The notes below the pieces were generated by a model. It did not search any database, was not told the DNA's origin, and was given only the letters and a program-made list of their open reading frames with translations. The position numbers and the translations under genes were made by a program. From IMG/VR virus record IMGVR_UViG_3300033182_000980, positions 124,001 to 188,000 of that record: 64,000 nt of DNA; one strand, 5' to 3'. Position 1 is the first letter of the stretch. Every line of letters begins with the position of its first letter. Positions 5,638 to 51,762 of the stretch are shown here, piece by piece.

Positions 5638-6912
5638 ATGATAGCTCGATATGCTTGTCCCCAGATTGAAAGTATCTTCAGCCCGATCCATCGTTTGAGG
5701 ATCTTTGTCGAAATCGAGAGACTTTTTTGTTCGAGTCAAGGATGTCCAGATTCAATCCTTGAGGATTTCTCGAAGGTAGACCTTGAACTGCTCCTTAAAG
5801 ATTTGGCTGTTAAGGAAAAAGAAACCCGACATGAGACGGTCGCTTTCATACAGGCTCTAGGGCTTCAGATGAGTAAGGAGTCCTTGCCTTATCTTCATAA
5901 GGGGGCAACCTCGTCTGACATCCTTGACACTTGTCTTGCAACACAGATGATGAACGCTTCTGATGTTGTCATTCAAAAGATTGAGTATCTTCTTGAAACG
6001 CTCAAGAAGAAGGCGATTGAATATAAAGACACTCCCATCTTAGGACGCTCTCATGGGATGTCGGGTGAGATCACGAGCTTTGGGGTTATCTTGCTTGGGT
6101 TTTATTCAGAGTGGACTCGAAACTTAGAACGCATGAAGAGAGCACAAGAAGAAATCTCTGTCGGGAAAGTATCTGGTGCTATGGGGAACTATGTTCATAT
6201 AGACCCTCAAATCGAGAAAACAATATGCAAGGCTCTAGGGCTTGATTTTGAGCCTGTTTCGACTCAAGTAATACCAAGAGATAGACACGCATACTTTATG
6301 AGCGTATTGGGCATTTTAGGGGCATCTATGGAACGCTTATCCATAGAGGTGAGAAACTTATCACAGTCTCTCATACAAGAAGTGGCAGAAGGGTTCGGTA
6401 AAGATCAAACAGGATCATCAGCTATGCCCCATAAAAGAAATCCAATCCTGTCCGAGAACCTAACTGGACTAGCTCGTATGATCCGATCTTATGTTCAGCC
6501 TAGCCTTGAGAATGTATCTCTTTGGTATGAACGAGATATGAGTCATTCATCTGTAGAGCGTATTGCCATAGAGGACTCCCTACATCTCGTTTGCTTTGGT
6601 CTAAGCAGACTTAATGGGGTTATCAAGAACCTTTATGTAGACGCAGACAGGATGGCTCATAATATAGACCAAGTTAAAGGGTCTTATTTGAGTCAGACTT
6701 GTCTCTTGTTCCTCATGGACAAGGGGTACGCTAGAGATGATGCGTATAAGGTAGTCCAAGAGATGACCCTTTATGGTCAGAAAGATCTCCTTGATGTTTT
6801 ACAAGGGGTCAAAGAGGCGGGTCATTTGACGCAAGAGGAGTTAGATCAGATCACTTCGAGAGATCGCTTTTTAGCTCGGACGAGCTTGATCTTCTCTAGG
6901 TTCGGTCTTTGA
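5638..6912 (+). CDS. purB: Adenylosuccinate lyase
   Basis: Fumarase-superfamily signature GSSAMPHKRNP, plus H.GATSSDI.DT, GRSHG and ERDMSHSSVER; full length at 424 aa. Confidence 0.95.
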   Translation: MIARYACPQIESIFSPIHRLRIFVEIERLFCSSQGCPDSILEDFSKVDLELLLKDLAVKEKETRHETVAFIQALGLQMSKESLPYLHKGATSSDILDTCLATQMMNASDVVIQKIEYLLETLKKKAIEYKDTPILGRSHGMSGEITSFGVILLGFYSEWTRNLERMKRAQEEISVGKVSGAMGNYVHIDPQIEKTICKALGLDFEPVSTQVIPRDRHAYFMSVLGILGASMERLSIEVRNLSQSLIQEVAEGFGKDQTGSSAMPHKRNPILSENLTGLARMIRSYVQPSLENVSLWYERDMSHSSVERIAIEDSLHLVCFGLSRLNGVIKNLYVDADRMAHNIDQVKGSYLSQTCLLFLMDKGYARDDAYKVVQEMTLYGQKDLLDVLQGVKEAGHLTQEELDQITSRDRFLARTSLIFSRFGL

Positions 6913-7006
6913 TCCACCCTCTTGGTCTGGCTTCTCTTCTTTTTTGGGTTTGTTCATGTGTTTGATTACTTCAAGACACCACATAAGGCATTTCCTTTCC
7001 GAAAGG

Positions 7007-7750
7007 TTATTTTCCCTTGCCCCCATTACGAGAGTCAAAGACCGAAGCCATAGCTGATCCTAATATACCTGTTAAGACCAATAAAACACGCTCAATCATA
7101 GCCAGAGAGTCTTTCGCTTCATTATTGCCTGTAATCCATGAGGTGATGATGAGCAAACCTAGCATGGTGACTAATCCCACTGTGCCATTGAACAACTGAC
7201 GCAATAGGGTGATCTGTCCAGTCAGCTTCTTCTCTTGTAGTAGGGCATACTCGGCTTTGGATTTATCTTCTTCAGCTTTCTTCTTCATCTCCTCAAGCTC
7301 AAGAAGCGTAGCCTTGTTCTCTTCAATGATCTGCTCAAGCTCGCTTTGTGTCTTTAACTCCTCTGATCTGTCTGCAAAGACAGCGACAAAGTATCTCTCC
7401 TCGCTGTTTTTTATGTCGGCCACATTCGCTTTAACAGGAACAACAGAACCATCTTTTTTGACTGCTTCGAGATTTCTCCAGTTACCCATGATGCCATGAC
7501 GCTTACCATTGGTCGCTCCCTTGTAGCTCTTAACATACCCCCTATGGTTATCCCCTATGTTAGAGGGCATAAGACTTCTAACATCTAAGCCGACCATCTC
7601 TTGATGTAGATAACCGAACATCATTGAAGCTGGTAGGTTAGCGTATCTAATAAATAGATCACCATTGCCCTCTTCTTGAGGATAATCACAAACGACAATA
7701 GCGATCTGTAAACGATCTCCCATCATCTCAAGTGTTTCGATAACTTTCAT
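7007..7750 (-). CDS. PAS-domain protein with coiled coil and two C-terminal TM helices
   Basis: MFGY...EMVG.DV..LMP...H.GY...KDGSVVPV...YFVAVF.D is a FixL-like PAS pattern; E/K-rich helix; two hydrophobic segments; RBS GGAG. Confidence 0.8.
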   Translation of the reverse strand: MKVIETLEMMGDRLQIAIVVCDYPQEEGNGDLFIRYANLPASMMFGYLHQEMVGLDVRSLMPSNIGDNHRGYVKSYKGATNGKRHGIMGNWRNLEAVKKDGSVVPVKANVADIKNSEERYFVAVFADRSEELKTQSELEQIIEENKATLLELEEMKKKAEEDKSKAEYALLQEKKLTGQITLLRQLFNGTVGLVTMLGLLIITSWITGNNEAKDSLAMIERVLLVLTGILGSAMASVFDSRNGGKGK

Positions 7751-7798
7751 TTGAAGCTCCCTTTGTTTTTTCTAACAAGGGGAGGCTTCATAAACGAG

Positions 7799-8443
7799 TT
7801 ATGAAAGACCTAACACCCCTTCAAGATTAGCACCCTCAAATACCACACCCTCTAAGATAGCACCCTTAAAACTCGTACCCTCTGATTGATAGTCATAATC
7901 CTCTGGACTAGAGCTAAGGTCACAGTCTTTGAAACTCGCCCCTGTAAGATCAGCATCCTCAAACTGTGCATGGGTAAGAGTTAATCCGTCAAACTTAGCA
8001 CCTCGAAGATTACACCCATCAAATAGAAGTCTAGGGTCTTGTAGATAACCATTCATACACTCGGACTCTGACTCCTCAAAGTCGTATACAATCCGAGTGT
8101 AGTCTACATCCTCAATAGTTGACCTTATGAAGTTTCCACCGTTGAACGCTGTCTGATTGAGCTTTACTCCTCTAAGATTACACCCTTCCATAATCGGCTC
8201 ATGGAACTTGGCATTATCAAAGGTTGCTCCTGTGAAGTCAGATCCTGTGAAGTCAACATCTTCTATGATGCAATCATCAAACCTAGCTCCCTTGAGGTTT
8301 AATCCTTTAAGACAGCATCCGATGAATGTTGAACCTCTTAGATCAGCACCCTCAAGGTTGGTATTTACAAAGTCTACATTTCTAAAAGTGCCTTTTCTTA
8401 AGTCAGCCCCTTTAAGATTGAGATTTTCAATCGTGTTGCTCAT
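7799..8443 (-). CDS. Pentapeptide repeat protein
   Basis: Tandem A(D/N)L/F-x-x pentapeptides (GADLR, GADLT, GANLE). Confidence 0.9.
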   Translation of the reverse strand: MSNTIENLNLKGADLRKGTFRNVDFVNTNLEGADLRGSTFIGCCLKGLNLKGARFDDCIIEDVDFTGSDFTGATFDNAKFHEPIMEGCNLRGVKLNQTAFNGGNFIRSTIEDVDYTRIVYDFEESESECMNGYLQDPRLLFDGCNLRGAKFDGLTLTHAQFEDADLTGASFKDCDLSSSPEDYDYQSEGTSFKGAILEGVVFEGANLEGVLGLS

Positions 8444-8735
8444 CTTTCCTCCAATGTGCTTTCATCTTTTCACGCACATTGGTTATATGTTTTAGTAGCT
8501 CGTCCATTTCTTTAAGTGTCTCAAATAACTCACCACGAGCCATTATGTGTAGAGGAAATACCACTAACCAAATACCTATCAAACAAGGTGCTAGGGTGAT
8601 CGGCACATAGTTCCCCTCGGAGAAAAAATAACACTCAATGAATAAGACAGCACTTAAAAAAACCCAAGCCATCTCCAACTTGAAGATGCGAGACTCGATT
8701 TCTTTTCGTTTACGGTAGAGCTGTTGTAAGGTCAT
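8427..8735 (-). CDS. Hypothetical membrane protein
   Basis: Two hydrophobic segments; overlaps both neighbours. Confidence 0.6.
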   Translation of the reverse strand: MTLQQLYRKRKEIESRIFKLEMAWVFLSAVLFIECYFFSEGNYVPITLAPCLIGIWLVVFPLHIMARGELFETLKEMDELLKHITNVREKMKAHWRKDEQHD

Positions 8736-9178
8736 ATTCCATCCTCCTCATAGTGTATCATTGGAGGCGGAATAACTTTTGGCTTTCTTATCCTTCGCTT
8801 TTGAGCGTGATTGATTATCGCCCAGTTGCCTTCCCCTACAAGTATCTCGATCTTTTCCCACTTGAAAAACGACTTTCGATCACCAGCTCTCATACTCGTG
8901 TTCGTAGTCTCGGTTCGTACTCTTAGGTCTTTTAAAGCTGTGATGCGAATGAGGCTACCTACAACTTTTTTAGTATAAAAAGACTTAACCCATTCTTCCC
9001 TTAACTTCCTTGCTGTCTCTTCTGGAAACACCACGACAGGTGGGTGTTCAAGGACAGGCATAGAGGTGTTGTCGGGTAGCTTAGGTAGCTCAAGTGGGGG
9101 CGGACAATACTCTTGAGCGAACGCTGTATTCATCATAAATAGCAAAGCAAATAGGTATCTCATTGTATATAATCCCAT
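8732..9178 (-). CDS. Hypothetical secreted protein
   Basis: Signal-peptide-like MRYLFALLFMMNTAFA. Confidence 0.55.
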   Translation of the reverse strand: MGLYTMRYLFALLFMMNTAFAQEYCPPPLELPKLPDNTSMPVLEHPPVVVFPEETARKLREEWVKSFYTKKVVGSLIRITALKDLRVRTETTNTSMRAGDRKSFFKWEKIEILVGEGNWAIINHAQKRRIRKPKVIPPPMIHYEEDGI

Positions 9179-10210: not shown

Positions 10211-11488
10211 TCACCCTAAGAACCTTCCTACCTTAACAATCACTGACTCCTCATCCGAACGAATGTCTCCCTCCCAAATCACAAGGCAATCCAGCCCCAC
10301 CTCCGCATAAGCCTCTATCGTATTACGCTCATGCTCCTCTTTACTCATTCCTGTTAACGCTTGTGAGTGCCAATACCTACCAAAACACTCGACCACCTTT
10401 GTAGCACCCCTATAAGGATGTTCGGGATCATCACTCACACAAACTACAAAGTCTGGGTTCTTAAAGCCACCAATCGAACCGTCAAAGTTCTTCTTGCTTG
10501 GAAGAAATCTCCAATATGCCCCATTACCTGTAAAGGTGAGATTGTCGCTATATGAAGCTACCCTCGACTCAAACTTGTTCATCTCTTTCTGACTCATAAG
10601 CAAGATAGGGAACTCCACACCATACCTTGCTTTTAGAGTATCTTGAACCTTACCCCAATGTCCCTCAATAGCACCTGGAAACTCAACCCCATAACGATCC
10701 ATCATCGTAGCCCTAATCTCCCCCTTGCCTTGCTCGGACGCAAAGTAGTGGCTTCCATAGTTTTCAATCATCGTCTTGAGTTGTTTCTGCCTAAACTCCT
10801 CCACAGCACTCGTGTAAGGCACACCGTATCGCTCCATGTTAGTCGCTACAACCTTCTCCATGACTTCTTCACTCATGCTAGGGATCGGCACTCCATAACG
10901 CTCTATATTCGTTGCCTCAATCTTAGCCCTTAGCTCTGCTGACCCGAATAGCGTCCCACCATACCTCTCAAGATTAGTAGCCAATGTCTTAGCCTTGACC
11001 CCATCATTCTGTTGAGGGTTGACTACACCATATTTCTCAAGGTTCGTCTGCTTGATCTTATCCTGTACGCTCTCCCAAGCAAAAGGGTTATCCTTACCCT
11101 TTAAGATTGGACGCTTACCATCAAGAGCCTCTTGCACCTTTTCAAAGACACTACTCTCCTTTGAGAAAGGGTTCTCTGCACCATAACGCTTGAGGTTAGT
11201 CTGTTTACGCTTCTCCACAGACTCTTTGCTGTGGGCAGGATTCTCAACCCCATAACGATTTAACATAGTTTGTTTGCGTCTAAACTTTGAGATCGCTTTC
11301 TTATCTCGACTTTGCCATACCCCACATCCACTCTTATGTCTTTTCATCTGTGAGTTTGAGGTAGATTCATGTCCACAGATACATGGTGTGATTGGTTCGG
11401 GTTTCCAGTTAGGCCAGCACTTTGCCATGTGGCGGCTATTGATTCGATCCCCTTTGAACTCTCTTTTACAGTGAGGGCAAGTAGCCAT
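10211..11488 (-). CDS. Putative homing endonuclease (Zn fingers, YG repeats, Vsr/DUF559-like nuclease)
   Basis: N-terminal CPHC and C.CGH motifs; nine (R/K/N)YG repeats; C-terminal NPDFV...VVECFGRYWH...CLVIWE. Confidence 0.8.
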   Translation of the reverse strand: MATCPHCKREFKGDRINSRHMAKCWPNWKPEPITPCICGHESTSNSQMKRHKSGCGVWQSRDKKAISKFRRKQTMLNRYGVENPAHSKESVEKRKQTNLKRYGAENPFSKESSVFEKVQEALDGKRPILKGKDNPFAWESVQDKIKQTNLEKYGVVNPQQNDGVKAKTLATNLERYGGTLFGSAELRAKIEATNIERYGVPIPSMSEEVMEKVVATNMERYGVPYTSAVEEFRQKQLKTMIENYGSHYFASEQGKGEIRATMMDRYGVEFPGAIEGHWGKVQDTLKARYGVEFPILLMSQKEMNKFESRVASYSDNLTFTGNGAYWRFLPSKKNFDGSIGGFKNPDFVVCVSDDPEHPYRGATKVVECFGRYWHSQALTGMSKEEHERNTIEAYAEVGLDCLVIWEGDIRSDEESVIVKVGRFLG

Positions 11489-11661
11489 AAGTAAATCCTT
11501 TCTGCTTGAGTTAGGGTTTACTTATATGAAAAGTAAGCAATCGGTCAAGACTTTTTGTCCTACCCCACAGCCCACATAGGGTTCAAAATATACCCTCAAA
11601 GTACAGATACCAACACCATACTTTCGTTGCTTACCTCAATACGCCTCTGCCTACATAGGGA

Positions 11662-12546
11662 TCAAAGAAAGTTTCGAGGTGCTAAAACGCCCCGACCCAC
11701 ATGGGGTCCGAAGGCGGAGCGGATACCCACACCGTACTTGGGCTGTTTTAACCCACGCATATATTTTGTAGTGCGAGCTTTTGCTTCGACAGACATCGAC
11801 CACATTTGCTCGGCAGAGGATTTGAGTCCTTCATACTTGCTTGATCTGTCGATGTTGAGTGAGATGCCACCTATCGAATAGTCAAACTCGTCCACGATCC
11901 AGTTTGCTTGTAGAGCCATAGCCGCAAACTGTATAGCACCTTGAAGGATAGGGGTTCTCCAAGCAGGTTTTTGGTTTACGAGAGCATCGAGGTTTTGGAG
12001 TTCTTCAGTTTCGGGTGGTTGCATATTCCACCAGTCTAAAGCTCGCTCTAGGTACTCTAGGAACTCCTCGTCCTCCCACACTTGACCAAAGACTCGGTTG
12101 TACGAACCGATATTCGCTTCATGCTCTGGTGGTCTGAAGTGATAATACTTGTCTGGGCAGTTGTGGACAACCACATCAGAACCTTCGAGTACAAGGTTAT
12201 GGTTCTCCTCAACAGTAAGGTCGAACATAAAGGGTCTGTTTTCGATGACCTCGATATTGGAAATCTTAGTTGTTCCTTGTGATGTCTGTAAGCTAAGTCC
12301 TACGGACAGCTCTTCTGCTGGAACACAAAGGTTAGGAGACATATAGACTCGGTGTCCACCTGTGATAGTGAGATGTTTACCTTGCTCTGTGGTGATTTTA
12401 TAAATGGGTTCAATAGGTGTAGGGTTCTTATGGGCTTTAGAGATCTGCTTCCAAGAGAAATCACCTTGAGTGTCCATAGATTTGATTGATAGCTTCCCTT
12501 TTTTGAAAGCGTCTTTAATCTTCTGTGTTTGTTCTTGAGATGTCAT
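11662..12546 (-). CDS. C-half of fractured gene: IntC (aa 1-129) plus 165-aa C-extein, putative virion neck/head-completion protein
   Basis: Intein block B ITGGH, block F MFDLTVEENHNL, block G VVHN followed by +1 Cys. Own RBS AAGGAG; ATGA overlap with the upstream stop. Confidence 0.9.
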   Translation of the reverse strand: MTSQEQTQKIKDAFKKGKLSIKSMDTQGDFSWKQISKAHKNPTPIEPIYKITTEQGKHLTITGGHRVYMSPNLCVPAEELSVGLSLQTSQGTTKISNIEVIENRPFMFDLTVEENHNLVLEGSDVVVHNCPDKYYHFRPPEHEANIGSYNRVFGQVWEDEEFLEYLERALDWWNMQPPETEELQNLDALVNQKPAWRTPILQGAIQFAAMALQANWIVDEFDYSIGGISLNIDRSSKYEGLKSSAEQMWSMSVEAKARTTKYMRGLKQPKYGVGIRSAFGPHVGRGVLAPRNFL

Positions 12547-13418
12547 AGTCCCAACTCCTTTTCAGTCCATGTTTGGTAAGACCAACCATTATCTTCAGCA
12601 ACTTTTTGAGACAGGGCTAACCTAGCGATAACATCTTCTCGGTTTAAAGCCCATTGTGGTTTAACTTCAACAAGAGTAGTAGATCCATCTTGATAGTGGA
12701 CAACAAAGTCGGGGAGTATTGTTCTTCCAGCAACTTTGTATATTGGCTCATAGGTATAGCTTTTGACATTAGGGTCTGACTCTAAGATGGAGATTGTCTT
12801 TGCTTCATAGCTTGAGCGAACACGAACCTCATCTTTATTGCCTTTAGGAGTAGCCTCTATTGAGGTTTTGCCTCTAAGGTAAGGTGTTGGGTTCTCTTTC
12901 ATTCTAATCGCTTGATCGTTCGATCTCCTTGCTCTTTCTTCGGGATCGTGGTGAAAGTCCATGAGCTTCTGCTTCACATCTGGATTTCCCCACACATCCT
13001 CTAAACTGTGGGCAGAAGCCTTTGCTTTGGAAATCGGATTGTCCCACCCCTTTTTAAGATTATCACGCTCATGTTGTGGTCGAACTCTCCCCCGATGGAA
13101 GTCAAAGTCTCCTTTAGCCCATTGTTTTTTTAGTTGCTCAGACCTATCCATACCTTTGGTAGATCGACCTGCATTAGCACCTAGCTTCTTGCGTTTGTCT
13201 TGAACTGCTTTACAGCCTTTCGCTTTGGTCAGCCTCTGAATAGACCCGTTGGAAAGACCTGTGATTTCGGTCATCTCTTTCCAAGAGAACCCTTGCTTAT
13301 GGAGATGTGAAACAAGAGCAGAACGCTTTTCTACAATCTCTTTAGCTACTCGACCTTTTTTGTTCAGTTGCTCTATTGTGAGGTCAAACTTAACTAGCAG
13401 TTCTTCAAGCATTTTCAT
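12543..13418 (-). CDS. Free-standing endonuclease (HTH plus TnsA-like PD-(D/E)XK domain) lying between the intein halves
   Basis: N-terminal HTH GFSWKEMTEITGLSNGSIQR; C-terminal RSSYE...DPNV..Y.YEP...PDFVV.Y.DG...LVEVKP; RBS AGGAG. Confidence 0.8.
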   Translation of the reverse strand: MKMLEELLVKFDLTIEQLNKKGRVAKEIVEKRSALVSHLHKQGFSWKEMTEITGLSNGSIQRLTKAKGCKAVQDKRKKLGANAGRSTKGMDRSEQLKKQWAKGDFDFHRGRVRPQHERDNLKKGWDNPISKAKASAHSLEDVWGNPDVKQKLMDFHHDPEERARRSNDQAIRMKENPTPYLRGKTSIEATPKGNKDEVRVRSSYEAKTISILESDPNVKSYTYEPIYKVAGRTILPDFVVHYQDGSTTLVEVKPQWALNREDVIARLALSQKVAEDNGWSYQTWTEKELGL

Positions 13419-14601: not shown

Positions 14602-15987
14602 ATGAAAATACTTGTAGGTGGAGATGTCAGCTTTGGAAGAATCTATGAAGATGAGAGGATTTCTTATTCAGCACCTTTGTGTTTAGCTTCCATAGGCGAG
14701 TTGGAGCGAGATTATTGTATCTTTAATCTTGAGAGCCTTTTTTGCGATGACTGGAAGGCAAATAAAAGAGATGTAGATGAGAAGTGGGGTACGAGCTACA
14801 CCCATGCTAATCCAGAAGATGTGAAGCATCTCATTGAGTGTGATGTAGATCATGTTTCCTTAGCTAACAACCATACACTTGATTGGGGTGAGGCAGGGGT
14901 CGAACAGACCTGTAAAGTCCTCAACAAGTTTGGCATCTCACATTCTGGATGTGGTTCTAATGATAGGACTCACATAGATAAAGAGAAGAAAATAATAGTG
15001 TTCTCGATAGATACGGTTGAGTGCCACTACAAAAAAGAAGATCCTTTAAACTGCAAAGAGGACATCAAAGACTTCTTTAAAGAGGTTAAAGAGCTTAGAG
15101 CAAAGCACGAGGATTACCTTCTGATTTGTTGTGTTCATTGGGGTCGGTTTAGGGTGAGTCCGAACAAGGGTCAGAAATCTATGGGTCGGAAGCTCATCGA
15201 CTGTGGCATTGATGTTGTTTTAGGTAATCATTCACATAAGGTGCAATACTTCGAGATGTACAAGGGTAAGCCTCTGTTTTACTCATTAGGGAACTTGTAC
15301 TTCACTCATAGAAATCCAGAATACAATAAGCCACCAAATGTTCATTACGCTTACCTCTCAACTCTTAACTTTGAGGGGCGAGATTTTAAAGGTGTAGACC
15401 ACCATCAAACTTGGTGTGACGATAAGAAGGTGGTTCTTAAAGAGGAGAAGCCCTCTAATCTTGGATTAGAAGCGTTGAGGTTTGCTCGGAGCTATATTGG
15501 CTTTGGGGAGTCCGAGCATACGACTAATGTTGGTTGGTTTATGAAGCACATAGACGCACCCAATAAGGAGACAGCGGCGTGGTGTGCGAGGTTTGTATTT
15601 TACTGTATTAAGAAAGCCTGTGAAGAGAATGGTATTGATCCAGTCCTAGAGAAGAATGACAAGACTGGATATGCTAAAGAGCTTTATAAGCAGATTGCAG
15701 AGATCGGGTATGTCTCATTAAATCCTATGCCTGGAGACATTATCGTTTGGGACAGGAAAGAGGAAGGAAACAAGAACGGACATATCGGGATAATAGAGTA
15801 TGTAGAGGGAGATAAGATCACAGCCATTGAAGGAAACAGAGCACCAAATCCTGGTTCAAAGGTTGATCGTTTTACTTACTCTTTGAACGAGCTTTTAAAC
15901 TACAAAGAGTGGGATGACGAAGATAAGCATTTCCATCTTTTTGAAGGGTTTGCTCGCCTACCTCATCTTAAAAAGTTGGACAAGTAA
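14602..15987 (+). CDS. CapA-family metallophosphoesterase fused to a CHAP amidase/peptidase
   Basis: CapA motifs GD, NLES, LANNHTLDWG, HWG, GNHSH, YSLGN. CHAP motifs AWCARFV, PGDIIVW, GHIGIIE, IEGN. Confidence 0.85.
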   Translation: MKILVGGDVSFGRIYEDERISYSAPLCLASIGELERDYCIFNLESLFCDDWKANKRDVDEKWGTSYTHANPEDVKHLIECDVDHVSLANNHTLDWGEAGVEQTCKVLNKFGISHSGCGSNDRTHIDKEKKIIVFSIDTVECHYKKEDPLNCKEDIKDFFKEVKELRAKHEDYLLICCVHWGRFRVSPNKGQKSMGRKLIDCGIDVVLGNHSHKVQYFEMYKGKPLFYSLGNLYFTHRNPEYNKPPNVHYAYLSTLNFEGRDFKGVDHHQTWCDDKKVVLKEEKPSNLGLEALRFARSYIGFGESEHTTNVGWFMKHIDAPNKETAAWCARFVFYCIKKACEENGIDPVLEKNDKTGYAKELYKQIAEIGYVSLNPMPGDIIVWDRKEEGNKNGHIGIIEYVEGDKITAIEGNRAPNPGSKVDRFTYSLNELLNYKEWDDEDKHFHLFEGFARLPHLKKLDK

Positions 15988-16826
15988 TGAAGATACTAGT
16001 TGGAGGAGACATATCCTTTGGTCGTATTTACAAAGGAAAAGAAATCCATTATGGCACTGATGGGTGTCTAACCGAGCTTGCTTTGATCCCTAGAGATTAT
16101 TCTATTTTCAATCTTGAGAGTCCTCTCACAAGGAAACCAAGAGTGAAACTACCTAAGCCACACGCTGGTGTTTATTTGTATGGTGAGATCAGTGATGTTA
16201 GGCATCTTTTAGACTCAGATGTGGACTATCTCTCTCTAGCCAACAATCACGCTATGGACTTTGCTTCAAGTGTCGAAGATACAATCTCCACTCTTGATAA
16301 GGTTGGCATCTCACATTCGGGTACAGGCACAGACTATTTGAAGCCCCATATAGATCACGATCTTGGGTTGGCGATTTTCTCAGCCGACTTAATCGGTAAG
16401 TATGCGTATGAAGATCCTGTCTGTTGTGGCCCTTACTTTCTTGACTTGTTGGTAAAAAAAGTCATCCCTCATTATCGAAAGCTAATTCCCGATTATGCGT
16501 TCCTATGTTGCGTACATTGGGGAGCTGAATATGAAATGCCAACTGAGGAGCAAAAGAGGGTCGGTAAAAGGCTCATTGATTGTGGTGTGGATATGGTTAT
16601 CGGTCATCACCCTCATGTAATACAGCCTATGGAAGTCTATAAAGGTAAGCCTATTTTTTATTCTTTAGGCAACTTGTACTTTACTCATCACAGGAAAGAC
16701 TTAGAAGCGAGGGATGATACACATCTTGGTTGCTTATCTTTAGTTGAAATGAATGGTAGAGAGTATGTAGGGCATACCGATTACCATACATGGACGATAA
16801 GTGGAGAGAGAGTGTTTTTGTTATGA
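15987..16826 (+). CDS. CapA-family metallophosphoesterase (standalone paralog)
   Basis: GDISFGR, NLES, LANNHAMDF, HWG.EY, GHHPHVIQP, YSLGN. Confidence 0.9.
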   Translation: MKILVGGDISFGRIYKGKEIHYGTDGCLTELALIPRDYSIFNLESPLTRKPRVKLPKPHAGVYLYGEISDVRHLLDSDVDYLSLANNHAMDFASSVEDTISTLDKVGISHSGTGTDYLKPHIDHDLGLAIFSADLIGKYAYEDPVCCGPYFLDLLVKKVIPHYRKLIPDYAFLCCVHWGAEYEMPTEEQKRVGKRLIDCGVDMVIGHHPHVIQPMEVYKGKPIFYSLGNLYFTHHRKDLEARDDTHLGCLSLVEMNGREYVGHTDYHTWTISGERVFLL

Positions 16827-25976: not shown

Positions 25977-27158
25977 ATGTTTTTTAAAAACTTAAAGTCA
26001 TTAGCTAGGTCAAAGAAATCTAGCCTCTGTGTTGGTCTTGACGATCCGAATGAAAGCCAAAGGGTAGAGAGAGTCTGCTCAATCATAGATCAGACTGAAC
26101 CTTATGTGGTCTGCTACAAGTTAAACCCAGCTTTCTATCATGGTAATGCAGAGCATATAAAAGCTATTACAGATTACATGAATGAGAGAGGTCTACTCTG
26201 GATCTACGATGGGAAGCTCGGAGATGTGCCTCATACAAACACCGAGTATGCCAAGTATGTTTATGATGTCTTAGGGGCGAGTGCCATGACAGCCCACCCT
26301 TATTGTGGATATGACTCCCTCACTCACCTCATTCGTAAAGATAAAGGTCTATTCGTCTTAGCGAGGACTACAAACCCTTATGCGTATAAGATACAGAGTC
26401 GGGTTCAAGATCACCTCTATGAGTGGTGTAGTCGTTCTAAAGAGATGGGTCTTGTTGTAGCTGGTAATAAAGAGGCTTTCCTACATGAGATTAGAAAGAA
26501 CCTTCCGAACACTTGGTTCTTATCACCAGGCATCGGGGCACAAGGTGGGGGGATCAGATATGCTGTTCCAAACACTCTGTATTCAATGAGTCGGACGATC
26601 CTAAACGCATCCAATCCTGCTGAAGTGGCGAAGGAATATGGTAGGCAGTCTTACTTTGATTTAGAGATTGAGCTTGAACACCACGAACTCATCAAGAGGG
26701 GAGAGTTCACATTAGCGAGTGGTCAGAAATCTAACCTGTATATTGACCTCAAGGGAGTGAGTGGAGTACCCGAACTATTTGATCGCATCGTTCACGAGCT
26801 GATTGAACTTCTCCCCACATCACATCAGATTGTGGGGATGGCAACTGCGGGTATCTCTTTCGCTTCTGTAATGGGTTCTTACCTCAATCGACCTTTTGGG
26901 TATGCGAGATCAGAGATCAAGTCGCATGGTACAGGGAAGATCATTGAGGGTAATGTTCAAAAGGGAGTGCCGATTGTCCTCATTGAAGATGTGGTATCGA
27001 CAGGGGGTTCATTGATTAAGGCTATCCTTGCCCTTAGAGAGCAAGGATATGAGGTTAATCAAGCGATTTCTGTAGTGGACAGGGGTATGGGTGGGTCAGA
27101 GGCATTAAAGGCAATAGGGGTTGATTTAAAGAGCCTTCTTAGTATGCACGATGTTTAA
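25977..27158 (+). CDS. pyrFE: Bifunctional OMP decarboxylase / orotate phosphoribosyltransferase (PyrF-PyrE fusion)
   Basis: N-terminal half: LCVGLD, YKLNPAFY, DGKLGDV, SPGIGAQGG. C-terminal half: FTLASGQKSNLYID, VLIEDVVSTGGS. Confidence 0.93.
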   Translation: MFFKNLKSLARSKKSSLCVGLDDPNESQRVERVCSIIDQTEPYVVCYKLNPAFYHGNAEHIKAITDYMNERGLLWIYDGKLGDVPHTNTEYAKYVYDVLGASAMTAHPYCGYDSLTHLIRKDKGLFVLARTTNPYAYKIQSRVQDHLYEWCSRSKEMGLVVAGNKEAFLHEIRKNLPNTWFLSPGIGAQGGGIRYAVPNTLYSMSRTILNASNPAEVAKEYGRQSYFDLEIELEHHELIKRGEFTLASGQKSNLYIDLKGVSGVPELFDRIVHELIELLPTSHQIVGMATAGISFASVMGSYLNRPFGYARSEIKSHGTGKIIEGNVQKGVPIVLIEDVVSTGGSLIKAILALREQGYEVNQAISVVDRGMGGSEALKAIGVDLKSLLSMHDV

Positions 27159-30606: not shown

Positions 30607-32031
30607 TCAGACCCTTATTTTGTAATGCTTGATGAGATCTTCTCTAATCTTAGTCACATAAGCATCATCACAGGTTTCATTGATAAGTGCGTTTCTTAGA
30701 CTTCTAAGGTATTTAACTATCCTATCGTCCTCGTGCTTTTTACTAAGCTCTTTTAAGAGTGCATGGTGATCCCACTCACCTGTGTATTTTTTGCTCTCTT
30801 CATTCGTAAGATACACGACACATAAGACACCATAAGGGTATTTCTCGGAGTAAGCTCTCATAACGCTTCGTATGTAGGTGTTTTCTTCGCTAGGTCTGCC
30901 ATGCTTGTAGCCTTCTCGCTTGTCCAATGTCTTTAGGACTTTTTCAAGAGACTCCACAGGGTACTCAAGCACTAAACCTTGCATAGACCCACCTGGTTTA
31001 GTTCCTATGACTAAGTGTCCGTTATTTTCTGACACTACATTGAAAGACCTAGAAATTGAGTTAATATGTCCTTTCCAACTGTTTGTGATGAGATCCTCAT
31101 GTTCTGGATCACTCATAAGCGTTCCGTAAGCAAAGACCCTAAACACTTTTTCATTCGGAGGAGGTGTTTCTACCACTTCCTCTTTGACTTCAATCTCTTC
31201 AATGACGACTTTGTTTTCCTTGTTCGAGGTGACTCGTTTGACTTCGAGCTTGCATCTCGCAGGCTTCTTGAAGTGCTTTTCATACCCTACAAACTCGGAG
31301 TCGTGATCGACTAAGTACATAGTCATTGTTCGTGTTTTTGCATCGAACAGGAACTGATTTGATGTGAACATATTGTCGGTTTTACGGACAACATTGTTAG
31401 GGTTCGGCACATCTTTGAGCCTAAGAGCGAAGAGTTTCTTGATGATGTCCTCTGATTTCTTGGGGCCACTTTCAAGGACTTTCATCATGGTTTCATATCG
31501 TGTTTCGGAGGACTCACGATCATCACCAGATATATAACCTGCGTCTGAATAGAAGATCCCATGATTTGTCCGAACAAAGTTCTTTTCTAGGATCTCGTCT
31601 ACTTTAGCCTCGTGTTTTGAGGTTTGCTCTATAACGAAAGCGTGTCTCTCATCCGAGATCATCGTATGCCCTTTAACACCTGTTTTGAGGTGTGTGAGGA
31701 TATGCAACGCTTGTAAGAGGGAGGTACATTCTAAAGCAGAGATGATCCGATGGGCATCTTGGGAAAATCGGATCGCTTTAGATTTCTTTTTTGTACCCTC
31801 TTTTTCATCTTCGAGAACCATTAGGGCCGCGTTAGATACAACAATCCCATGCTCATTGATGCCTTCAACCCAACCTGTACGCTCATCTTTGAAATACAGG
31901 ATCTCAACCCCATTCTCAGAGATGATGTGGTGTACTCGAATGTCGGGGATATAGTTTCTGTCTCTATTTTTAAAGACCCACTTTTTATCGCCAATATGGG
32001 TGATAGCGATTACACAGGATTGCTTTTTCAT
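30607..32031 (-). CDS. Ntn-hydrolase (C45/C59-like) fused to gamma-glutamylcyclotransferase (ChaC-like)
   Basis: N-terminal part: Cys6, KNRDR, GINEHG, RTNH, S..R. C-terminal part: VFAYGTLM, LDKREGY. Confidence 0.7.
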   Translation of the reverse strand: MKKQSCVIAITHIGDKKWVFKNRDRNYIPDIRVHHIISENGVEILYFKDERTGWVEGINEHGIVVSNAALMVLEDEKEGTKKKSKAIRFSQDAHRIISALECTSLLQALHILTHLKTGVKGHTMISDERHAFVIEQTSKHEAKVDEILEKNFVRTNHGIFYSDAGYISGDDRESSETRYETMMKVLESGPKKSEDIIKKLFALRLKDVPNPNNVVRKTDNMFTSNQFLFDAKTRTMTMYLVDHDSEFVGYEKHFKKPARCKLEVKRVTSNKENKVVIEEIEVKEEVVETPPPNEKVFRVFAYGTLMSDPEHEDLITNSWKGHINSISRSFNVVSENNGHLVIGTKPGGSMQGLVLEYPVESLEKVLKTLDKREGYKHGRPSEENTYIRSVMRAYSEKYPYGVLCVVYLTNEESKKYTGEWDHHALLKELSKKHEDDRIVKYLRSLRNALINETCDDAYVTKIREDLIKHYKIRV

Positions 32032-41390: not shown

Positions 41391-44300
41391 ATGGCTATTG
41401 AAGGCGGCTACGCACCACCTGGTGTTTACACCCGAACAATTTTTGAAGATACCAATACTAATCTCGCTCAGCTACAAGGGAAAGTACCTACCCTCATTGG
41501 TGTAGGTAAACAAACCTTTTCTGTGACTGGTAGTGAGTTAGTGAGGGGGTCTTCTGCAACCATAGATCAAAGGATTGTAGAAGAAGATCCTACAGGTCGA
41601 ATGATTGCTGACACAAACCCCGATGGTTCTTTTGTCCTCTCTGACTTTGATGGTGTCTTGACAGAAGTATATGTGAGACACTTCCCAATCGTAACTGGAG
41701 ACGGATCGGGAACTACCTCAAATACCCCTAGCTCTGTATCAGCGACTATCAATGGCAACGCTACTGTTATCCTTGAGGTTGATGGTGCGAATGGGAAAAT
41801 TCGTCTCGCAGAAGCACCGAGTCAAGGTGATGATGTTAGGATTTCTTACTTCTTCAATCGTACAGATACTTTTGTTGAAGATGAGGTTTTAACCTCACAG
41901 GTTTCTGATTTCCAAACAGAGATCAGAGGTTCTGCTTCTACTTTTGTGATCACTGCCGAGACTAATACTCTTATCCTCACTTGTGACGGTGAGACTCAAG
42001 TCCTCACACTTGGTGTTGAAGCAAATAGAGCCGACTCTCTCGATAAGGTTCAGAACATCATTAATGGTGCGAGTATTGGATCACTTGAGGCAAGCACCTA
42101 TGTAGACCAAGACGGCTCGGAGAACCTTCTTCTTTCTGCTGATGGCGAAATCATCGTAGGTGCAGGTTCTGCTAACCTCGCTCTTGGTATTTACACCAAT
42201 CAGAGAGGCACAGCTAGAAATCGTACCTTCTTCACCACGAACGGACCGATTGTTGACGGAACAAACGCTGGTGTCATCACTACTGATGTTAGCCTCATCA
42301 CAGTTAAAGTAAATAACGCTGTCGTTCAAGCCGAGTCTGTTGACGGTGCAAATGGGTCGTTTACTCTTGCGAGTCCTCCATCGGTTGGCTCGACAGTAAG
42401 TGTTTCTTACTACCACAACACATTCCGAGATCAGTTCGATTACATCCCTGGTCGTGATGTTAAATCACTTGATCGTGTTTCACTTGTTGCGAGTGGTGGA
42501 GGAGCGGCAGCTCAGTTCATTCAAGATGTAGATTTCGTACTACATGACGATAAGATCGTTTGGGGTACTGCTTCAATCGTATCTCAAGGTGATATCCAGA
42601 CTGGTAATACTGCATTCGGCACTACTCAAGTTTCAGCCCTTCTTCGTGATGAGCGTGGGTATCTCTTAGAGTGTTCTCCTGTTGTTAACACTAGCGTGAT
42701 CCCACCAAGAGTCCTAGCAAATACCTTTAAACTCCCTTATCAGCCTGTGGACGGTACAGGGTCGGGTATTCCTAGCTCTAATCCAGCTCTTATCCAAGTA
42801 CGCACAGGCGTTTCATTTGCTGACGCACTAGAAAACCCTGTAGCGACTGTGACTAGAGTTGATCCAGCTACTTCACAGATTACTCTTGCGACAGCACCAC
42901 CTACAAACCACAAGGTGTTCGCTACATTCTTCTATAGCATCCTCCAAGATCGCTTTGATCTTAATGCTTATAATGTGGCAGTTGAAACCGTTGGTGCAAG
43001 TGGTATTGGTACATACACCCTTACTTCTGGTACGACATCATTCTTCGGAGCAGAGCTTACAGCTAAGGGGGCTGATCTCTCCGAGGTTGTGGTCGAGTTC
43101 CCAAGTGGTTCAGAAGCTCTTATCGGCACTCGTTTCTCTGGTGGTGTTCCTGTAGAGGAGACTATCACACTTGAGTTTGGTGATTTTGAGGCTACTCCAG
43201 CAGTCTTCTTTGCCGAGGGGTCAGCTTCTTATTACCTTGTTCAAGGTCAGAGCGACACTCTTAATATCACAGTAGATGCACAGCCTGTGGTTGTTGAGTT
43301 CGATCAGCCTACCGAGGGTGGTCGTACAGGACACATCACACACCAAGTTGGTGAGGTTCTTCCTTACACAGCAGAGTCAAACAACGCTGATCTTGGTACA
43401 GGGATTTCTACTTCGGTTGATCTCGTTGTTGATGGTAAGGCACTTGCTTCGGCTACTGTTGCTGGTGATGACAAGACTGTCGATCACCTTATCACAGAAA
43501 TCAACACACAGGCAGAGGCTGTTCCAGCTTCTTACACTGCCATGTCCCCATTCGGATCATGGGAGGCTAAGAACAACACCTTTAAGTCGTTCGAGTTTAG
43601 GTATGTAGGTTCTACGAGTGGGCCTTCTGCAACTTTGACAGCTACCATTGCCGAAGCAGTTTATGGTAATGCGTCTGCTCTTGCAGGTGACTCTGACCTA
43701 GCTGATGTAAATAACTCGACAGGTGTCAATAAAGCGATTCAGACAGCGATTGAGACTTATGTTGCAGGTGCAGGAGCCGCTGTCTTTGATGGTCTTGAGA
43801 TCACAGTAAGTGCTGATACAAGCAACCGTCTTGTTTTCTCACTTGTTGGCGTTCCTAATGTTGCAGATGGTGCAGGTGGGGATGACGATTTCGGATATGT
43901 GGAGTTCATTGGTGCTGATGATGATACCTTCCTATCAGTAGCTGGTATCGACTATGATGTTGCAGGTGGTACTCAGTCTAAGTGGGGTCAGCTACCTGTA
44001 GCTTCTAAGGTTTCCACAGCTCTTGGTGGTGGTGCTCTTAGAGATCGTTTGATTCTCAAGAACCGAACCTTTGTAGGTAATAACTACTACCCACCTGTTG
44101 ATCTTGGCTTGAGCGTCACCACTGGTACTAACCTTGATCTTATGGGTATTTCACCTACCCTTAATGTTGTAGGCACTCGTACCTCAATCCTCGATAAACC
44201 TTCTATCCGACTTACAGTTGGATGGGACGAGGTTGACGCTAACGGTATTCCAGCTAAGATTCTTTACAATGGTGATACAGAGGATGCTAATAACATCCTT

Positions 44301-49375: not shown

Positions 49376-49449
49376 GCACCCATAGCTCAGCTGGATAGAG
49401 CACCACTTTCCTAAAGTGGGTGTCGCAGGTTCGAGTCCTGCTGGGTGTA
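49376..49449 (+). tRNA. tRNA-Arg(CCT)
   Basis: Cloverleaf; anticodon arm CCACT-TTCCTAA-AGTGG. Confidence 0.93.
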
Positions 49450-49692
49450 CTAGGTTCTCCCACCATTCCTTTATTTTAACTAGGGGAAATTAGGCTTACA
49501 ATGGTGGGAGGGTCTTATCCTAGACAATAACCTTAGAAAATAAAGAACTGCTTACAAGTCTAGGAGTAAGCCTGTAATCCCTCAAAATCTACCATGTGGG
49601 GGGTCGCCGTGAGATAATGTGGTGGGGTGATTCTCTCTGACCTAGTTAGTCCAAACTTGAGAGATTTCTATTGATAATCATGGAGTATAGTC

Positions 49693-49770
49693 ATGGGAAA
49701 CCCTAACTATCCATCCAAGTCCGGAAACCCAAGTGGTGGTGGACGCGGAAATACCCCGAAGTCTAAATGA
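49693..49770 (+). CDS. 25-aa G/P/N-rich peptide
   Basis: MGNPNYPSKSGNPSGGGRGNTPKSK with a GGAG RBS 7 nt upstream. Confidence 0.45.
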   Translation: MGNPNYPSKSGNPSGGGRGNTPKSK

Positions 49771-50097
49771 GACTTGACAAGATCAACCTTGACCTCTTAA
49801 ATGAGGTCGTGTTGAACAATGCCTTGTGTCTTACCCAGACATTCCTTACCCTTTGATCTGTGGGGTAGGCAAATCAGATCAGCTCTTTCTTCTTTGGAAG
49901 ATACTCCCCCTAGTTGTTCCGTAGGGTAGAGCGAAAACGGAACGCTTAATATGTCTGACTCCTCTTGGTGGAGCTTGTCGGGTTCGACTCCCACAGATGT
50001 ACTAGACCCTCATATCTTTTTCATTCTACATATTAACTTAGCTTTTATGTTGAATGGTGTATTGGGATAAAGTATGAGTTTTTGAGGGTCTAACTTT

Positions 50098-50171: not shown

Positions 50172-50173
50172 TT

Positions 50174-51742: not shown

Positions 51743-51762
51743 CTATCAAGGAGTTTCAACAC

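What the first reader, a model, noticed from the sequence alone, without database searches (positions are those of the whole stretch)
7007..7750. FixL-like PAS domain with a retained heme-ligand-position His, fused to a coiled coil and two C-terminal TM helices, with no kinase
Seen: LMPSNIGDNHRGYVKSY...IMG...KKDG...YFVAVFADRSE, then an E/K helix and a TM hairpin ending the protein. Known: the FixL heme-PAS has LMP.....HD.YI..Y...IIG...R.DG, where this His is the proximal heme ligand. Normal sensors place TMs first and an output domain last. Inference: a phage-encoded O2/redox sensor whose only output is the membrane segment, e.g. a signal-gated holin/antiholin or a decoy for host histidine kinases.
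Basis: partly seen in the sequence, partly recalled or inferred. Interest (0 to 1): 0.72.

Follow-up and report, generated by a model that had tools for sequence, protein, structure and literature searches.

The report
Phage heme-PAS sensor ending in membrane hairpin
A giant marine phage carries a small protein that looks like the oxygen-sensing haem domain of bacterial FixL, joined by a rigid coiled coil to two extremely conserved membrane helices instead of an enzyme; it belongs to a widespread, undescribed family found only in phages, and it may let phages tie membrane damage or lysis timing to oxygen or redox state.

Summary
ORF 7007-7750 (-) encodes 247 aa: a PAS domain, a coiled coil and a C-terminal two-helix membrane hairpin, with no kinase. 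In sequence and in predicted fold, its best PDB matches are the haem-b PAS domains of FixL and then DosP. His69 aligns with the FixL proximal His and Arg92 with the O2-contacting Arg. Both are essentially invariant in more than 120 homologues.

The window lies in a 375-kb phage. Homologues are all about 240-270 aa and sit on phage-like contigs from marine and aquatic metagenomes (GC 36-68%). None was found in 50,697 GenBank phages or 185,579 prokaryote genomes, so this is not a truncated host kinase.

Three new findings:
- TM2 is the best-conserved part (91% pairwise identity, against 57% for the PAS core).
- The PAS-to-membrane linker varies only in whole heptads (112 of 114 sequences).
- The hairpin is homologous to a stand-alone 134-aa protein that is the fourth gene of an endolysin/holin-like cassette in another phage lineage.

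Best reading: a haem-ligand-gated membrane effector, probably acting on lysis timing or membrane permeability. Haem binding and the membrane function are inferred, not shown. I rate it a new variant of a known kind.

The parts
7007..7750 (-). Whole gene: 247-aa PAS / coiled-coil / 2-TM-hairpin protein (stop codon 7007-7009)
   Evidence: ORF list and translation; 166 homologue clusters of the same length and architecture
7367..7750 (-). N-cap helix plus PAS domain, residues 1-128, FixL haem-b class
   Evidence: Pfam PAS_9 28.5 bits; PDB phmmer/hmmsearch hits are FixL, DosP and other haem PAS only; Foldseek top hits are FixL haem domains
7544..7546 (-). His69 codon, aligned with the proximal haem ligand (BjFixL His200 / RmFixL His194)
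   Evidence: Alignment; His in 124 of 130 family members. The 6 exceptions are a subfamily with the F-alpha helix deleted
7475..7480 (-). Trp91-Arg92; Arg92 aligns with the O2-contacting Arg220 of BjFixL (start of G-beta)
   Evidence: Alignment; W in 130/130 and R in 126/130
7364..7372 (-). Asp127-Arg128-Ser129, a 'DxT'-type junction between the last PAS strand and the signalling helix (FixL has DLT here)
   Evidence: D 126/130, R 127/130, T/S 121/130; aligned with FixL 'RDLTE'
7190..7366 (-). Coiled coil (residues 129-168, variable) plus conserved juxtamembrane helix (169-187)
   Evidence: Single predicted helix 129-207; a/d heptad pattern and 3.5-residue periodicity; linker length 42/49/56/63/70 residues, a multiple of 7 in 112 of 114 sequences
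7130..7189 (-). TM1 (residues 188-207)
   Evidence: Hydropathy; pairwise identity 0.67
7100..7129 (-). Short extracytoplasmic loop (208-217)
   Evidence: Lies between the two hydrophobic segments
7034..7099 (-). TM2 (218-239) with a small-residue face (T227 G228 / G231 S232 / A235 S236); the most conserved stretch of the protein
   Evidence: Mean pairwise identity 0.91, entropy 0.21 bits; shared with the stand-alone short form
7010..7033 (-). Short basic C-terminal tail (cytoplasmic by the positive-inside rule)
   Evidence: Sequence; variable in the family
7751..7798 (-). Intergenic spacer upstream of the gene; forms a stable stem-loop that pairs the Shine-Dalgarno
   Evidence: RNA fold -21 kcal/mol, z -5.55; variants break synteny here

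Best explanation
The gene encodes a self-contained, phage-borne sensor-effector.

A cytoplasmic FixL-class PAS domain binds haem b through His69 and reads a diatomic ligand or redox state. O2 is the most likely ligand, because the FixL O2-contacting Arg is kept as Arg92.

The last PAS strand passes through a DxT-type junction into a parallel coiled coil, presumably a dimer. The length of this coiled coil is kept to whole heptads, and it runs in the same register straight into TM1.

The state of the PAS domain is thereby passed mechanically (by rotation, piston or splaying) to an N-in/C-in two-helix hairpin in the inner membrane. Its TM2 has a glycine-zipper-like small-residue face and is nearly invariant.

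The hairpin is the output. By changing its self-association, or its binding to a membrane partner, it alters membrane integrity. The most likely role is to set or veto the time of lysis in a holin/antiholin or pinholin-like manner, according to the oxygen or energy state of the infected cell.

Shown here: the fold class, residue conservation, heptad quantisation, hairpin conservation, phage-only distribution, and homology to a lysis-cassette protein. Inferred: haem binding, dimerisation, topology, ligand identity, and the link to lysis.
For: Haem-PAS class:
- FixL is the best match in sequence and in predicted fold, and the family profile hits only haem PAS domains.
- Conserved pocket residues include His69 (124/130), Arg92 (126/130), Met61, Pro62, Val73, Tyr76, Ile87, Gly89 and Val110.

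Output through the helix and hairpin:
- The distance from the DxT junction to the juxtamembrane motif is a multiple of 7 in 112 of 114 sequences.
- The a/d register continues into TM1, and the model shows one continuous helix 129-207.
- Pairwise identity is 0.91 for TM2 and 0.74 for the juxtamembrane segment, against 0.57 for the PAS core and 0.37 for the coiled coil. This holds across carriers with GC 0.36-0.68.
- Divergent members that have lost the F-alpha helix and its His still keep the hairpin.

Link to lysis:
- The hairpin is homologous to a stand-alone 134-aa protein (hhalign probability 99%, E 2e-18).
- In all 11 loci of that other phage lineage, this protein follows an endolysin (PG_binding_1 + CHAP), an 82-aa 2-TM protein and a 1-TM coiled-coil protein.
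- The first two membrane proteins mirror the 2-TM plus 1-TM holin-like pair described for mycobacteriophages (bioRxiv 10.64898/2025.12.04.692442).
- A glycine zipper in TMD2 drives pinhole formation in the phage 21 pinholin (as cited in PMC9025707).
- Holin genes unlinked to the endolysin gene are known (P1 LydA; PMC9025707).

Phage-only, single-gene unit:
- Homologue contigs carry phage genes.
- No neighbouring gene is conserved among PAS-form loci.
- No relatives were found in GenBank phages or in GTDB genomes.
Against: - No cofactor or membrane phenotype can be tested here.
- The FixL propionate-binding residues (BjFixL Arg206 and His214) are not conserved in the family. The FG loop is longer and is modelled with less confidence.
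- The PAS form is not in a recognisable lysis cassette in the window. A peptidoglycan-hydrolase-like gene lies within 4 kb in only 3 of 9 independent contexts, which is not significant.
- No holin family in Pfam or PHROGs matches the hairpin.
- The short-form cassette already has a holin-like 2-TM protein. The last position of a late operon is also where unrelated accessory genes sit (for example bor after the lambda lysis genes; from general knowledge).
- Holins are normally very diverse. The 91% identity of TM2 fits binding to a conserved host target at least as well.
- All 11 short-form loci belong to one phage lineage, so they count as one observation.
Confidence: 0.4

Rival explanations
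1. Same sensor, different target. The near-invariant hairpin docks onto a highly conserved host inner-membrane protein (for example a respiratory, transport, protease or cell-wall-precursor enzyme). It switches that protein on or off according to haem-ligand state. This would be host takeover or metabolic tuning rather than lysis control.
For: TM2 is 91% identical across carriers whose GC spans 0.36-0.68. That is unusual for holins and typical of an interface with a conserved partner. The gene travels alone, with no conserved phage neighbour, so any partner is more likely host-encoded. In the window it sits among accessory or metabolic genes (purB-like lyase, pentapeptide-repeat protein, PGA_cap/CHAP).
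Against: No host target is identified. No similar hairpin exists in 185,579 prokaryote genomes that might suggest mimicry. The only informative context for the hairpin is a lysis cassette.
Confidence: 0.25
2. A membrane effector for conflicts between phages: superinfection exclusion or an abortive 'suicide' switch. The PAS domain senses a stress signal and the hairpin depolarises the cell or blocks DNA entry by competitors.
For: The 'sensor plus 2-TM effector' architecture is common in conflict systems (general knowledge). The gene behaves as a mobile cassette with variable flanks. In the short form it is the last gene of the late operon, a typical place for accessory genes.
Against: No match to defence-type 2-TM effectors; the SLATT hit at E 5.9 is noise. 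PADLOC was not searched. The carriers include T4-like and jumbo lytic-type genomes. A haem gas sensor is an odd trigger for superinfection.
Confidence: 0.1
3. Not a gas sensor. The PAS domain binds haem or another ligand only as cargo or as a structural element (haem capture or storage, or a membrane-anchored scaffold), or it has lost haem binding. The hairpin is just an anchor.
For: The propionate-binding Arg206/His214 equivalents are not conserved. A sister subfamily lacks the His altogether.
Against: A mere anchor would not be the best-conserved segment. A passive tether would not need a linker quantised in heptads with a kept DxT junction. His69 and Arg92 are invariant within the haem-type subfamily.
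Confidence: 0.1
4. A truncated or captured host FixL-like histidine kinase acting as a decoy that heterodimerises with host kinases.
For: The PAS domain and the following helix resemble the PAS/S-helix part of FixL-type kinases.
Against: All 166 homologue clusters have the same short architecture. None lies in a cellular genome. The nearest cellular PAS domains are only about 29% identical. The coiled coil, which would be the interface, is the least conserved part. No remnant of HisKA or HATPase is present.
Confidence: 0.03

Closest known systems
FixL haem-b PAS oxygen sensor (Bradyrhizobium / Sinorhizobium), PDB 1drm, 1dp6, 1d06, 8js5
   Same: Same PAS fold. Best match in both sequence and predicted structure. 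Shares the proximal His on F-alpha, the LMP motif before it, the Ile/Gly of the FG loop, the O2-contacting Arg at the start of G-beta, and a DxT junction into a coiled-coil signalling helix.
   Different: No HisKA/HATPase kinase; the helix ends in a membrane hairpin instead. The propionate-binding Arg206 and His214 are not conserved. The FG loop is longer. It is encoded by phages, and identity is only about 25-29%.
E. coli DosP (EcDOS) and other haem-PAS enzymes
   Same: Second tier of sequence and structure matches (E 1e-7 to 5e-6). Haem-PAS at the N-terminus controlling a C-terminal output.
   Different: The output there is a c-di-GMP phosphodiesterase; here there is no enzyme domain.
Aer aerotaxis receptor (PAS-FAD, linker, membrane hairpin, HAMP, signalling domain)
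   Same: Same unusual order: a cytoplasmic N-terminal PAS domain followed by an N-in/C-in membrane hairpin (general knowledge of Aer).
   Different: Aer binds FAD and continues after the hairpin with HAMP and kinase-control domains, and its hairpin is an anchor. Here the protein ends at the hairpin, which is the most conserved part. No sequence similarity was detected.
Class II holins / pinholin S21-68 of phage 21, and the actinophage LysF1a/LysF1b holin-like pair
   Same: Two TM helices with predicted N-in/C-in topology, a short charged C-terminal tail, and a small-residue (glycine-zipper-like) face on TM2. A stand-alone homologue sits in an endolysin cassette next to a 2-TM and a 1-TM protein (PMC9025707; bioRxiv 10.64898/2025.12.04.692442).
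   Different: No sequence match to any holin family. The protein carries a 185-residue cytoplasmic sensor, which no known holin has. In the window it is not next to an endolysin. Its conservation is far higher than is usual for holins.
VqmA-Phi of vibriophage VP882 (phage-encoded PAS-domain receptor; Silpe & Bassler 2019, listed as ref. 6 of PMC10468136)
   Same: A phage-encoded PAS-domain sensor that lets the phage base a lysis-related decision on a small-molecule cue (general knowledge).
   Different: VqmA-Phi binds the autoinducer DPO and acts through a DNA-binding domain on transcription. The present protein is of the haem type and acts, if at all, directly in the membrane.

Membership tests
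PAS domain (Pfam PAS_9 / PAS) | Profile match above the curated threshold and a PAS fold | tested here: met
   PAS_9 28.5 bits against a cut-off of 27; AF2 model with a five-strand sheet and helices; Foldseek matches hundreds of PAS structures
FixL/DosP-class haem-b PAS | Histidine on the F-alpha helix at the proximal haem-ligand position | tested here: met
   His69 aligns with the FixL proximal His; invariant in the haem-type subfamily, 124/130 overall
FixL/DosP-class haem-b PAS | Distal Arg at the start of G-beta that contacts bound O2 (BjFixL Arg220) | tested here: met
   Arg92 aligned; 126/130
FixL/DosP-class haem-b PAS | Residues that hold the haem propionates (BjFixL Arg206, His214) | tested here: not met
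   Position 75 is variable (G/S/D). Position 85 is mostly S/T/G in the family, though it is His in the window protein. Other basic residues nearby might substitute.
FixL/DosP-class haem-b PAS | Actual binding of haem b and of O2/CO/NO | not testable with these tools
   Needs spectroscopy. The haem docking job was not folded.
FixL-type sensor histidine kinase | HisKA (DHp) and HATPase_c domains after the PAS domain | tested here: not met
   No such Pfam hit; the protein ends 8 residues after TM2
Holins (class II / pinholin type) | Small membrane protein with two TM helices, N-in/C-in, and a charged C-terminal tail | tested here: inconclusive
   Two TM helices and a basic tail are present. Topology is only inferred. 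At 247 aa, with a large sensor domain, it is outside the usual size. The short form (134 aa) fits better.
Holins (class II / pinholin type) | Gene next to the endolysin gene | tested here: not met
   Window neighbours are a pentapeptide-repeat protein and a purB-like lyase. The feature is met only for the stand-alone homologue in L026-L036.
Holins (class II / pinholin type) | Sequence membership in a described holin family | tested here: not met
   No PHROG or Pfam holin hit for the hairpin, even at E 10. The Atlas nearest named cluster scores 0.79, which is chance level.
Holins (class II / pinholin type) | Timed, lethal permeabilisation of the membrane that releases or activates the endolysin | not testable with these tools
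   Needs expression and complementation assays
Aer-type PAS receptors | HAMP and MCP signalling domains after the membrane hairpin | tested here: not met
   Nothing follows the hairpin
2-TM effectors of conflict systems (SLATT and similar) | Profile match to the effector family | tested here: not met
   Only a SLATT_fungal hit at E 5.9 in one distant member

The most novel reading that the evidence does not exclude
This is the first ligand-gated holin-type protein. In a single polypeptide, a haem gas sensor directly opens or blocks a pinholin-like membrane lesion through a heptad-locked coiled coil. Diverse marine phages would then time host killing and lysis by the oxygen or respiratory state of the cell. 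The sister subfamily without the His would use the same hairpin with another input.
Probability: 0.2. Interest if true: 0.9.

Novelty: new variant of a known kind. Interest (0 to 1): 0.72.

Why it matters
Haem-PAS gas sensors are known only in cells, and always drive an enzyme, a DNA-binding domain or a chemotaxis module. Here the same sensor is wired to nothing but a membrane hairpin, in a family that appears only in uncultured phages. The family is nonetheless common: at least 166 clusters at 90% identity, Tara Oceans scaffolds found in 31 data blocks, and seawater, wetland and lagoon samples.

If the sensor works as inferred, it would be the first haem-based gas sensor in a virus. It would also be a direct way for phages to read host respiration or ambient oxygen, which matters at oxic-anoxic interfaces and on marine particles.

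The heptad-locked linker and the tiny output make it an attractive minimal model of how a PAS signal crosses into a membrane. It could also serve as a compact O2-responsive membrane switch for synthetic biology.

The hairpin itself is a new, highly conserved phage membrane module with a probable link to lysis.

Tried and rejected
- Complex prediction with two copies of the protein plus two haems: the job was counted but NOT folded.
- PHROGs and Pfam on the hairpin alone, on the short form and on fragments: nothing above noise.
- ESM Atlas by features: only unnamed viral clusters. The nearest named clusters (DUF6450 and a GTA 3-TM holin) both score 0.79, which is chance level.
- megablast of 7 kb of the window, and tblastn of both protein forms, against 50,697 GenBank phages: no match.
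- Two scans of 185,579 GTDB genomes with hairpin patterns (PAS form and short form): motif hits, but no relative. No host or prophage clue was obtained.
- Search for a conserved neighbouring gene by all-against-all BLAST of ORFs from 35 loci: none for the PAS form. The only other recurring cluster among PAS-form loci was antisense ORFs of the gene itself.
- Enrichment of peptidoglycan hydrolase genes near the PAS form: 3 of 9 contexts within 4 kb, about what chance allows. Not used as evidence.
- P0244 (118 aa, DUF6104-like N-terminus plus hairpin) looked like a second fusion partner. It sits on a 562-bp contig and cannot be judged.
- Metatranscriptome contigs overlap the gene at 7008-7153 and 7383-7546. 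DNA carry-over cannot be excluded, so transcription is not claimed.
- Literature searches for a phage haem-PAS, PAS-holin or phage oxygen sensor found nothing relevant.
- The 'Thorarchaeota' and 'Euryarchaeota' MAG labels on two homologues were treated as probable mis-binned phage contigs, because their neighbours are phage genes.

Full report
**1. What is there**

The minus-strand ORF 7007..7750 encodes 247 residues. A GGGAG Shine-Dalgarno lies 6 nt before the ATG. The window is bases 124,001-188,000 of a 375,691-bp virus record rated complete. It carries nine tRNA genes, a 1,619-aa ORF with a tail-sheath-like C-terminus, homing endonucleases and other phage-type genes. 'Phage-encoded' is therefore correct, and this is a jumbo phage.

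The protein has four parts:
- An N-cap helix and PAS domain (residues 1-128).
- One continuous predicted helix (129-207), of which residues 129-187 form the cytoplasmic coiled coil and juxtamembrane segment and residues 188-207 are TM1.
- A second membrane helix after a loop of about 10 residues (AF2 helix 212-242; the hydrophobic segments are 186-204 and 216-234).
- An eight-residue basic tail.

Nothing else is present: no HisKA, HATPase, HAMP or DNA-binding domain.

**2. The PAS domain is of the FixL haem class**

- Pfam PAS_9 matches above its curated threshold.
- Against every PDB chain, the best sequence matches are the haem domains of RmFixL (E 2e-10) and BjFixL (about 1e-8), then EcDOS/DosP.
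- A profile of 26 homologues hits 14 distinct PDB sequences at E <= 1e-3, and all of them are haem-b PAS domains.
- The AF2 model (mean pLDDT 86) finds FixL haem domains first by Foldseek (target TM-score 0.84-0.87, E about 1e-10).

In the alignments, His69 lies under the proximal haem ligand. Met61, Pro62, Val57, Tyr76, Ile87 and Gly89 match FixL pocket and FG-loop residues. Arg92 lies under BjFixL Arg220, the residue that contacts bound O2.

In a 130-sequence family alignment, His69 is present in 124 sequences, Trp91 in 130 and Arg92 in 126.

Two FixL residues that hold the haem propionates (Arg206, His214) are not conserved in the family, and the FG loop is longer. Haem binding is therefore very likely but not certain, and ligand specificity is open.

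**3. It is a family, and a phage one**

A search of 5.8 billion proteins gave 166 clusters at E <= 1e-3. Nearly all are 241-265 aa and aligned over 98-100% of the query.

Every long contig examined is phage-like:
- T4-type portal and prohead protease;
- rIIA/rIIB-like genes two genes downstream of the PAS gene;
- Dam methylase and a denV-like gene;
- primase-helicase and tape measure on 75-kb Tara Oceans scaffolds, seen in 31 data blocks.

IMG/VR holds 27 related loci. tblastn found nothing in 50,697 GenBank phage records. Pattern scans found no relative in 185,579 prokaryote species genomes.

The nearest cellular PAS domains are tandem haem-type repeats in giant multi-PAS sensors with SpoIIE or kinase outputs, at only about 29% identity. 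The 'truncated host kinase' reading is thus refuted.

The samples are seawater, marine, wetland, lagoon and aquatic metagenomes. The GC content of carrier loci runs from 0.36 to 0.68, so the hosts must be diverse.

**4. Where the selection lies**

Among 119 full-length haem-type members, mean pairwise identity by region is:

| Region | Identity |
|---|---|
| TM2 | 0.91 |
| Juxtamembrane helix | 0.74 |
| TM1 | 0.67 |
| PAS core | 0.57 |
| Coiled coil | 0.37 |
| C-terminal tail | 0.37 |

A mere anchor would be the least conserved part, not the most. TM2 carries two adjacent small-xxx-small ladders (T227/G231/A235 and G228/S232/S236).

**5. The linker is a signalling helix**

The distance from the Asp of the DxT-type junction at the end of the PAS domain (D127-R-S/T; FixL has D-L-T there) to the conserved juxtamembrane L-T/S-G-Q motif is 42, 49, 56, 63 or 70 residues. 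It is a multiple of seven in 112 of 114 sequences. At least one of the two exceptions (an apparent distance of 3) is clearly a motif mis-call.

Family-averaged hydropathy shows a clean a/d pattern from 138 to 166 that resumes in the same register at 176/180/183/187, entering TM1. The strongest periodicity is at 3.5 residues.

The sequence of the coiled coil is free to vary, but its phase is fixed. This is what is expected if the PAS domain transmits a rotation or displacement to the membrane helices. It is hard to explain for a passive tether.

**6. The hairpin is a separable module with a link to lysis**

Six divergent members have lost the F-alpha helix, and with it the His, but keep the PAS fold and the hairpin. 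The sensor can change while the output stays.

Eleven IMG/VR contigs encode a stand-alone 134-aa protein. Where a larger contig is held these are GC-rich and about 30-46 kb. The protein consists of a short N-terminal helix plus the same hairpin, including a 17-residue stretch that differs at two positions from the window's TM2. Profile-profile comparison gives 99% probability and E 2e-18 over 71 columns.

In all eleven loci this is the last gene of the rightward operon, directly after:
- an endolysin (PG_binding_1 + CHAP above the Pfam thresholds, and several PHROG endolysin families);
- an 82-aa protein with a long, Gly/Ala-rich hydrophobic stretch, read here as two TM helices;
- a 1-TM coiled-coil protein.

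The first two membrane proteins mirror the LysF1a/LysF1b pair of mycobacteriophages (bioRxiv 10.64898/2025.12.04.692442).

This is the only functional context available for the hairpin, and it points to lysis. It has three limits. It comes from one phage lineage. The cassette already has a holin-like protein. The end of a late operon is also a common site for unrelated accessory genes.

**7. The PAS form travels alone**

All-against-all BLAST of ORFs from 35 loci found no neighbouring gene shared among PAS-form loci, even between phages whose PAS proteins are 71% identical.

Contigs from public runs that carry near-identical copies break synteny exactly at the stop codon (7007) and in the 48-nt spacer before the start (7770-7806). 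They carry 488-nt and 2,594-nt insertions there.

That spacer folds into a strong stem-loop that pairs the Shine-Dalgarno (-21 kcal/mol, z -5.55).

In the window, the gene is the last of a run of minus-strand genes for secreted or membrane proteins and a pentapeptide-repeat protein. It converges on a purB-like adenylosuccinate lyase. The nearest peptidoglycan-hydrolase-type domain (PGA_cap + CHAP) is 7 kb away on the other strand.

A hydrolase-like gene lies within 4 kb in 3 of 9 independent contexts, which chance can explain.

**8. Mechanism proposed**

A cytoplasmic haem-PAS, probably a dimer, reads O2 (or NO, CO or redox state). The change at the FG loop and G-beta (Arg92) is passed through the DxT junction and the phase-locked coiled coil into TM1. 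This alters how the near-invariant TM2 faces pack.

The effect would be one of two kinds. Self-association could produce a small lesion, as with the glycine-zipper TMD2 of the phage 21 pinholin (cited in PMC9025707). Alternatively, the hairpin could bind and block another membrane protein.

I favour an effect on lysis timing or membrane energisation. Holin genes unlinked to the endolysin gene are known (P1 LydA; PMC9025707).

My estimates:
- about 0.8 that the domain binds haem;
- about 0.75 that the hairpin is the output;
- about 0.35-0.4 that the output concerns lysis.

The main rival (0.25) is a conserved host membrane target, which the extreme conservation of TM2 across hosts suits well. 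Superinfection exclusion or abortive functions (0.1), a non-sensing haem-binding anchor protein (0.1) and a kinase decoy (0.03) follow.

**9. Novelty**

I found no paper describing a phage haem-PAS protein, a PAS-holin fusion or a phage oxygen sensor. No Pfam or PHROG family covers the hairpin.

The nearest known things are:
- FixL and DosP (same sensor, enzymatic output);
- Aer (same PAS-then-hairpin order, but FAD, with HAMP and MCP domains after it);
- class II holins and pinholins (same topology, no sensor);
- VqmA-Phi (a phage PAS sensor with a DNA-binding output).

I rate this a new variant of a known kind: a known sensor class with a new, minimal membrane output in a new biological setting. 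If the hairpin proves to be a ligand-gated lesion, it would merit a higher rating.

**10. Limits**

Everything functional is inferred from sequence, predicted structure and context. Presence in a metatranscriptome does not prove transcription.

Noticed in passing
window 7751-7798 (-): The 48-nt spacer between the pentapeptide-repeat gene and the PAS gene forms a stable stem-loop (-21 kcal/mol, z -5.55) that pairs the Shine-Dalgarno, with no U tract. It could control translation, or be a recombination joint of the cassette.
   Followed up: partly
window 6986-7007 and 7770-7806: Near-identical copies in public metagenome contigs carry a 488-nt insertion just after the stop codon and a 2,594-nt insertion just before the start. 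A metatranscriptome contig diverges exactly at 7008. The gene behaves as a discrete mobile cassette.
   Followed up: partly
window 5638-6912 (+): Phage-encoded adenylosuccinate lyase (purB-like; Lyase_1 + ADSL_C). It is an auxiliary purine-metabolism gene and converges on the PAS gene.
   Followed up: no
window 7799-8443 (-): A 214-aa pentapeptide-repeat protein immediately upstream of the PAS gene, with overlapping stop/start links to a 102-aa 2-TM protein (8427-8735) and a secreted 148-aa protein (8732-9178). This is a run of envelope-directed genes of unknown role. A related phage locus (L008) also has a pentapeptide-repeat gene about 10 kb away.
   Followed up: no
window 14602-16826 (+): Two adjacent PGA_cap (CapA-like, poly-gamma-glutamate) domain proteins, the first fused to a CHAP peptidase. 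This may be a capsule- or wall-degrading enzyme rather than the endolysin.
   Followed up: no
window 10211-13418 (-): A cluster of selfish-element genes: a homing endonuclease (PHROG 3339), an intein-splicing-domain protein and a TnsA-like endonuclease.
   Followed up: no
window 49376-56001 (+): Nine tRNA genes (Arg x2, Gly, Asn, Tyr, Glu, Lys, Leu, Met) interspersed with small ORFs.
   Followed up: no
window 41391-46250 (+): A 1,619-aa ORF in which only the last 330 or so residues match a tail-sheath PHROG, which would be an unusually long sheath-like protein. Also noted: a 474-aa ORF (30607-32031) with a gamma-glutamyl-cyclotransferase-like domain, and a 393-aa ORF (25977-27158) with a phosphoribosyltransferase-like domain.
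   Followed up: no
proteins P0193, P0197, P0215, P0223, P0234, P0255; loci L023, L040, L041: A sister subfamily keeps the PAS fold, the heptad-quantised linker and the hairpin, but has the F-alpha helix (and the haem His) deleted. It presumably senses something other than a haem ligand. In L040 a PG_binding_1 protein lies about 0.4 kb away.
   Followed up: partly
loci L026-L036 (e.g. L027 4669-6264): A conserved four-gene lysis cassette in GC-rich phage contigs (about 30-46 kb where a larger contig is held): PG_binding_1+CHAP endolysin, an 82-aa 2-TM protein, a 1-TM coiled-coil protein, and the 134-aa stand-alone hairpin protein. Convergent genes follow, including a DNA methylase.
   Followed up: yes
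proteins P0011 and P0279 (loci L008, L037): Two homologues are labelled in NCBI as coming from Thorarchaeota and Euryarchaeota MAGs, but their contigs carry phage genes (amidase, resolvase, primase-helicase, tape measure). These are probably phage contigs mis-binned into archaeal MAGs, though archaeal viruses are not excluded.
   Followed up: partly
proteins P0175, P0209: Two 271-272-aa members keep the haem-type PAS domain, but have a diverged and longer segment before the membrane helices and a weaker TM2 motif. They may be a variant output module.
   Followed up: no
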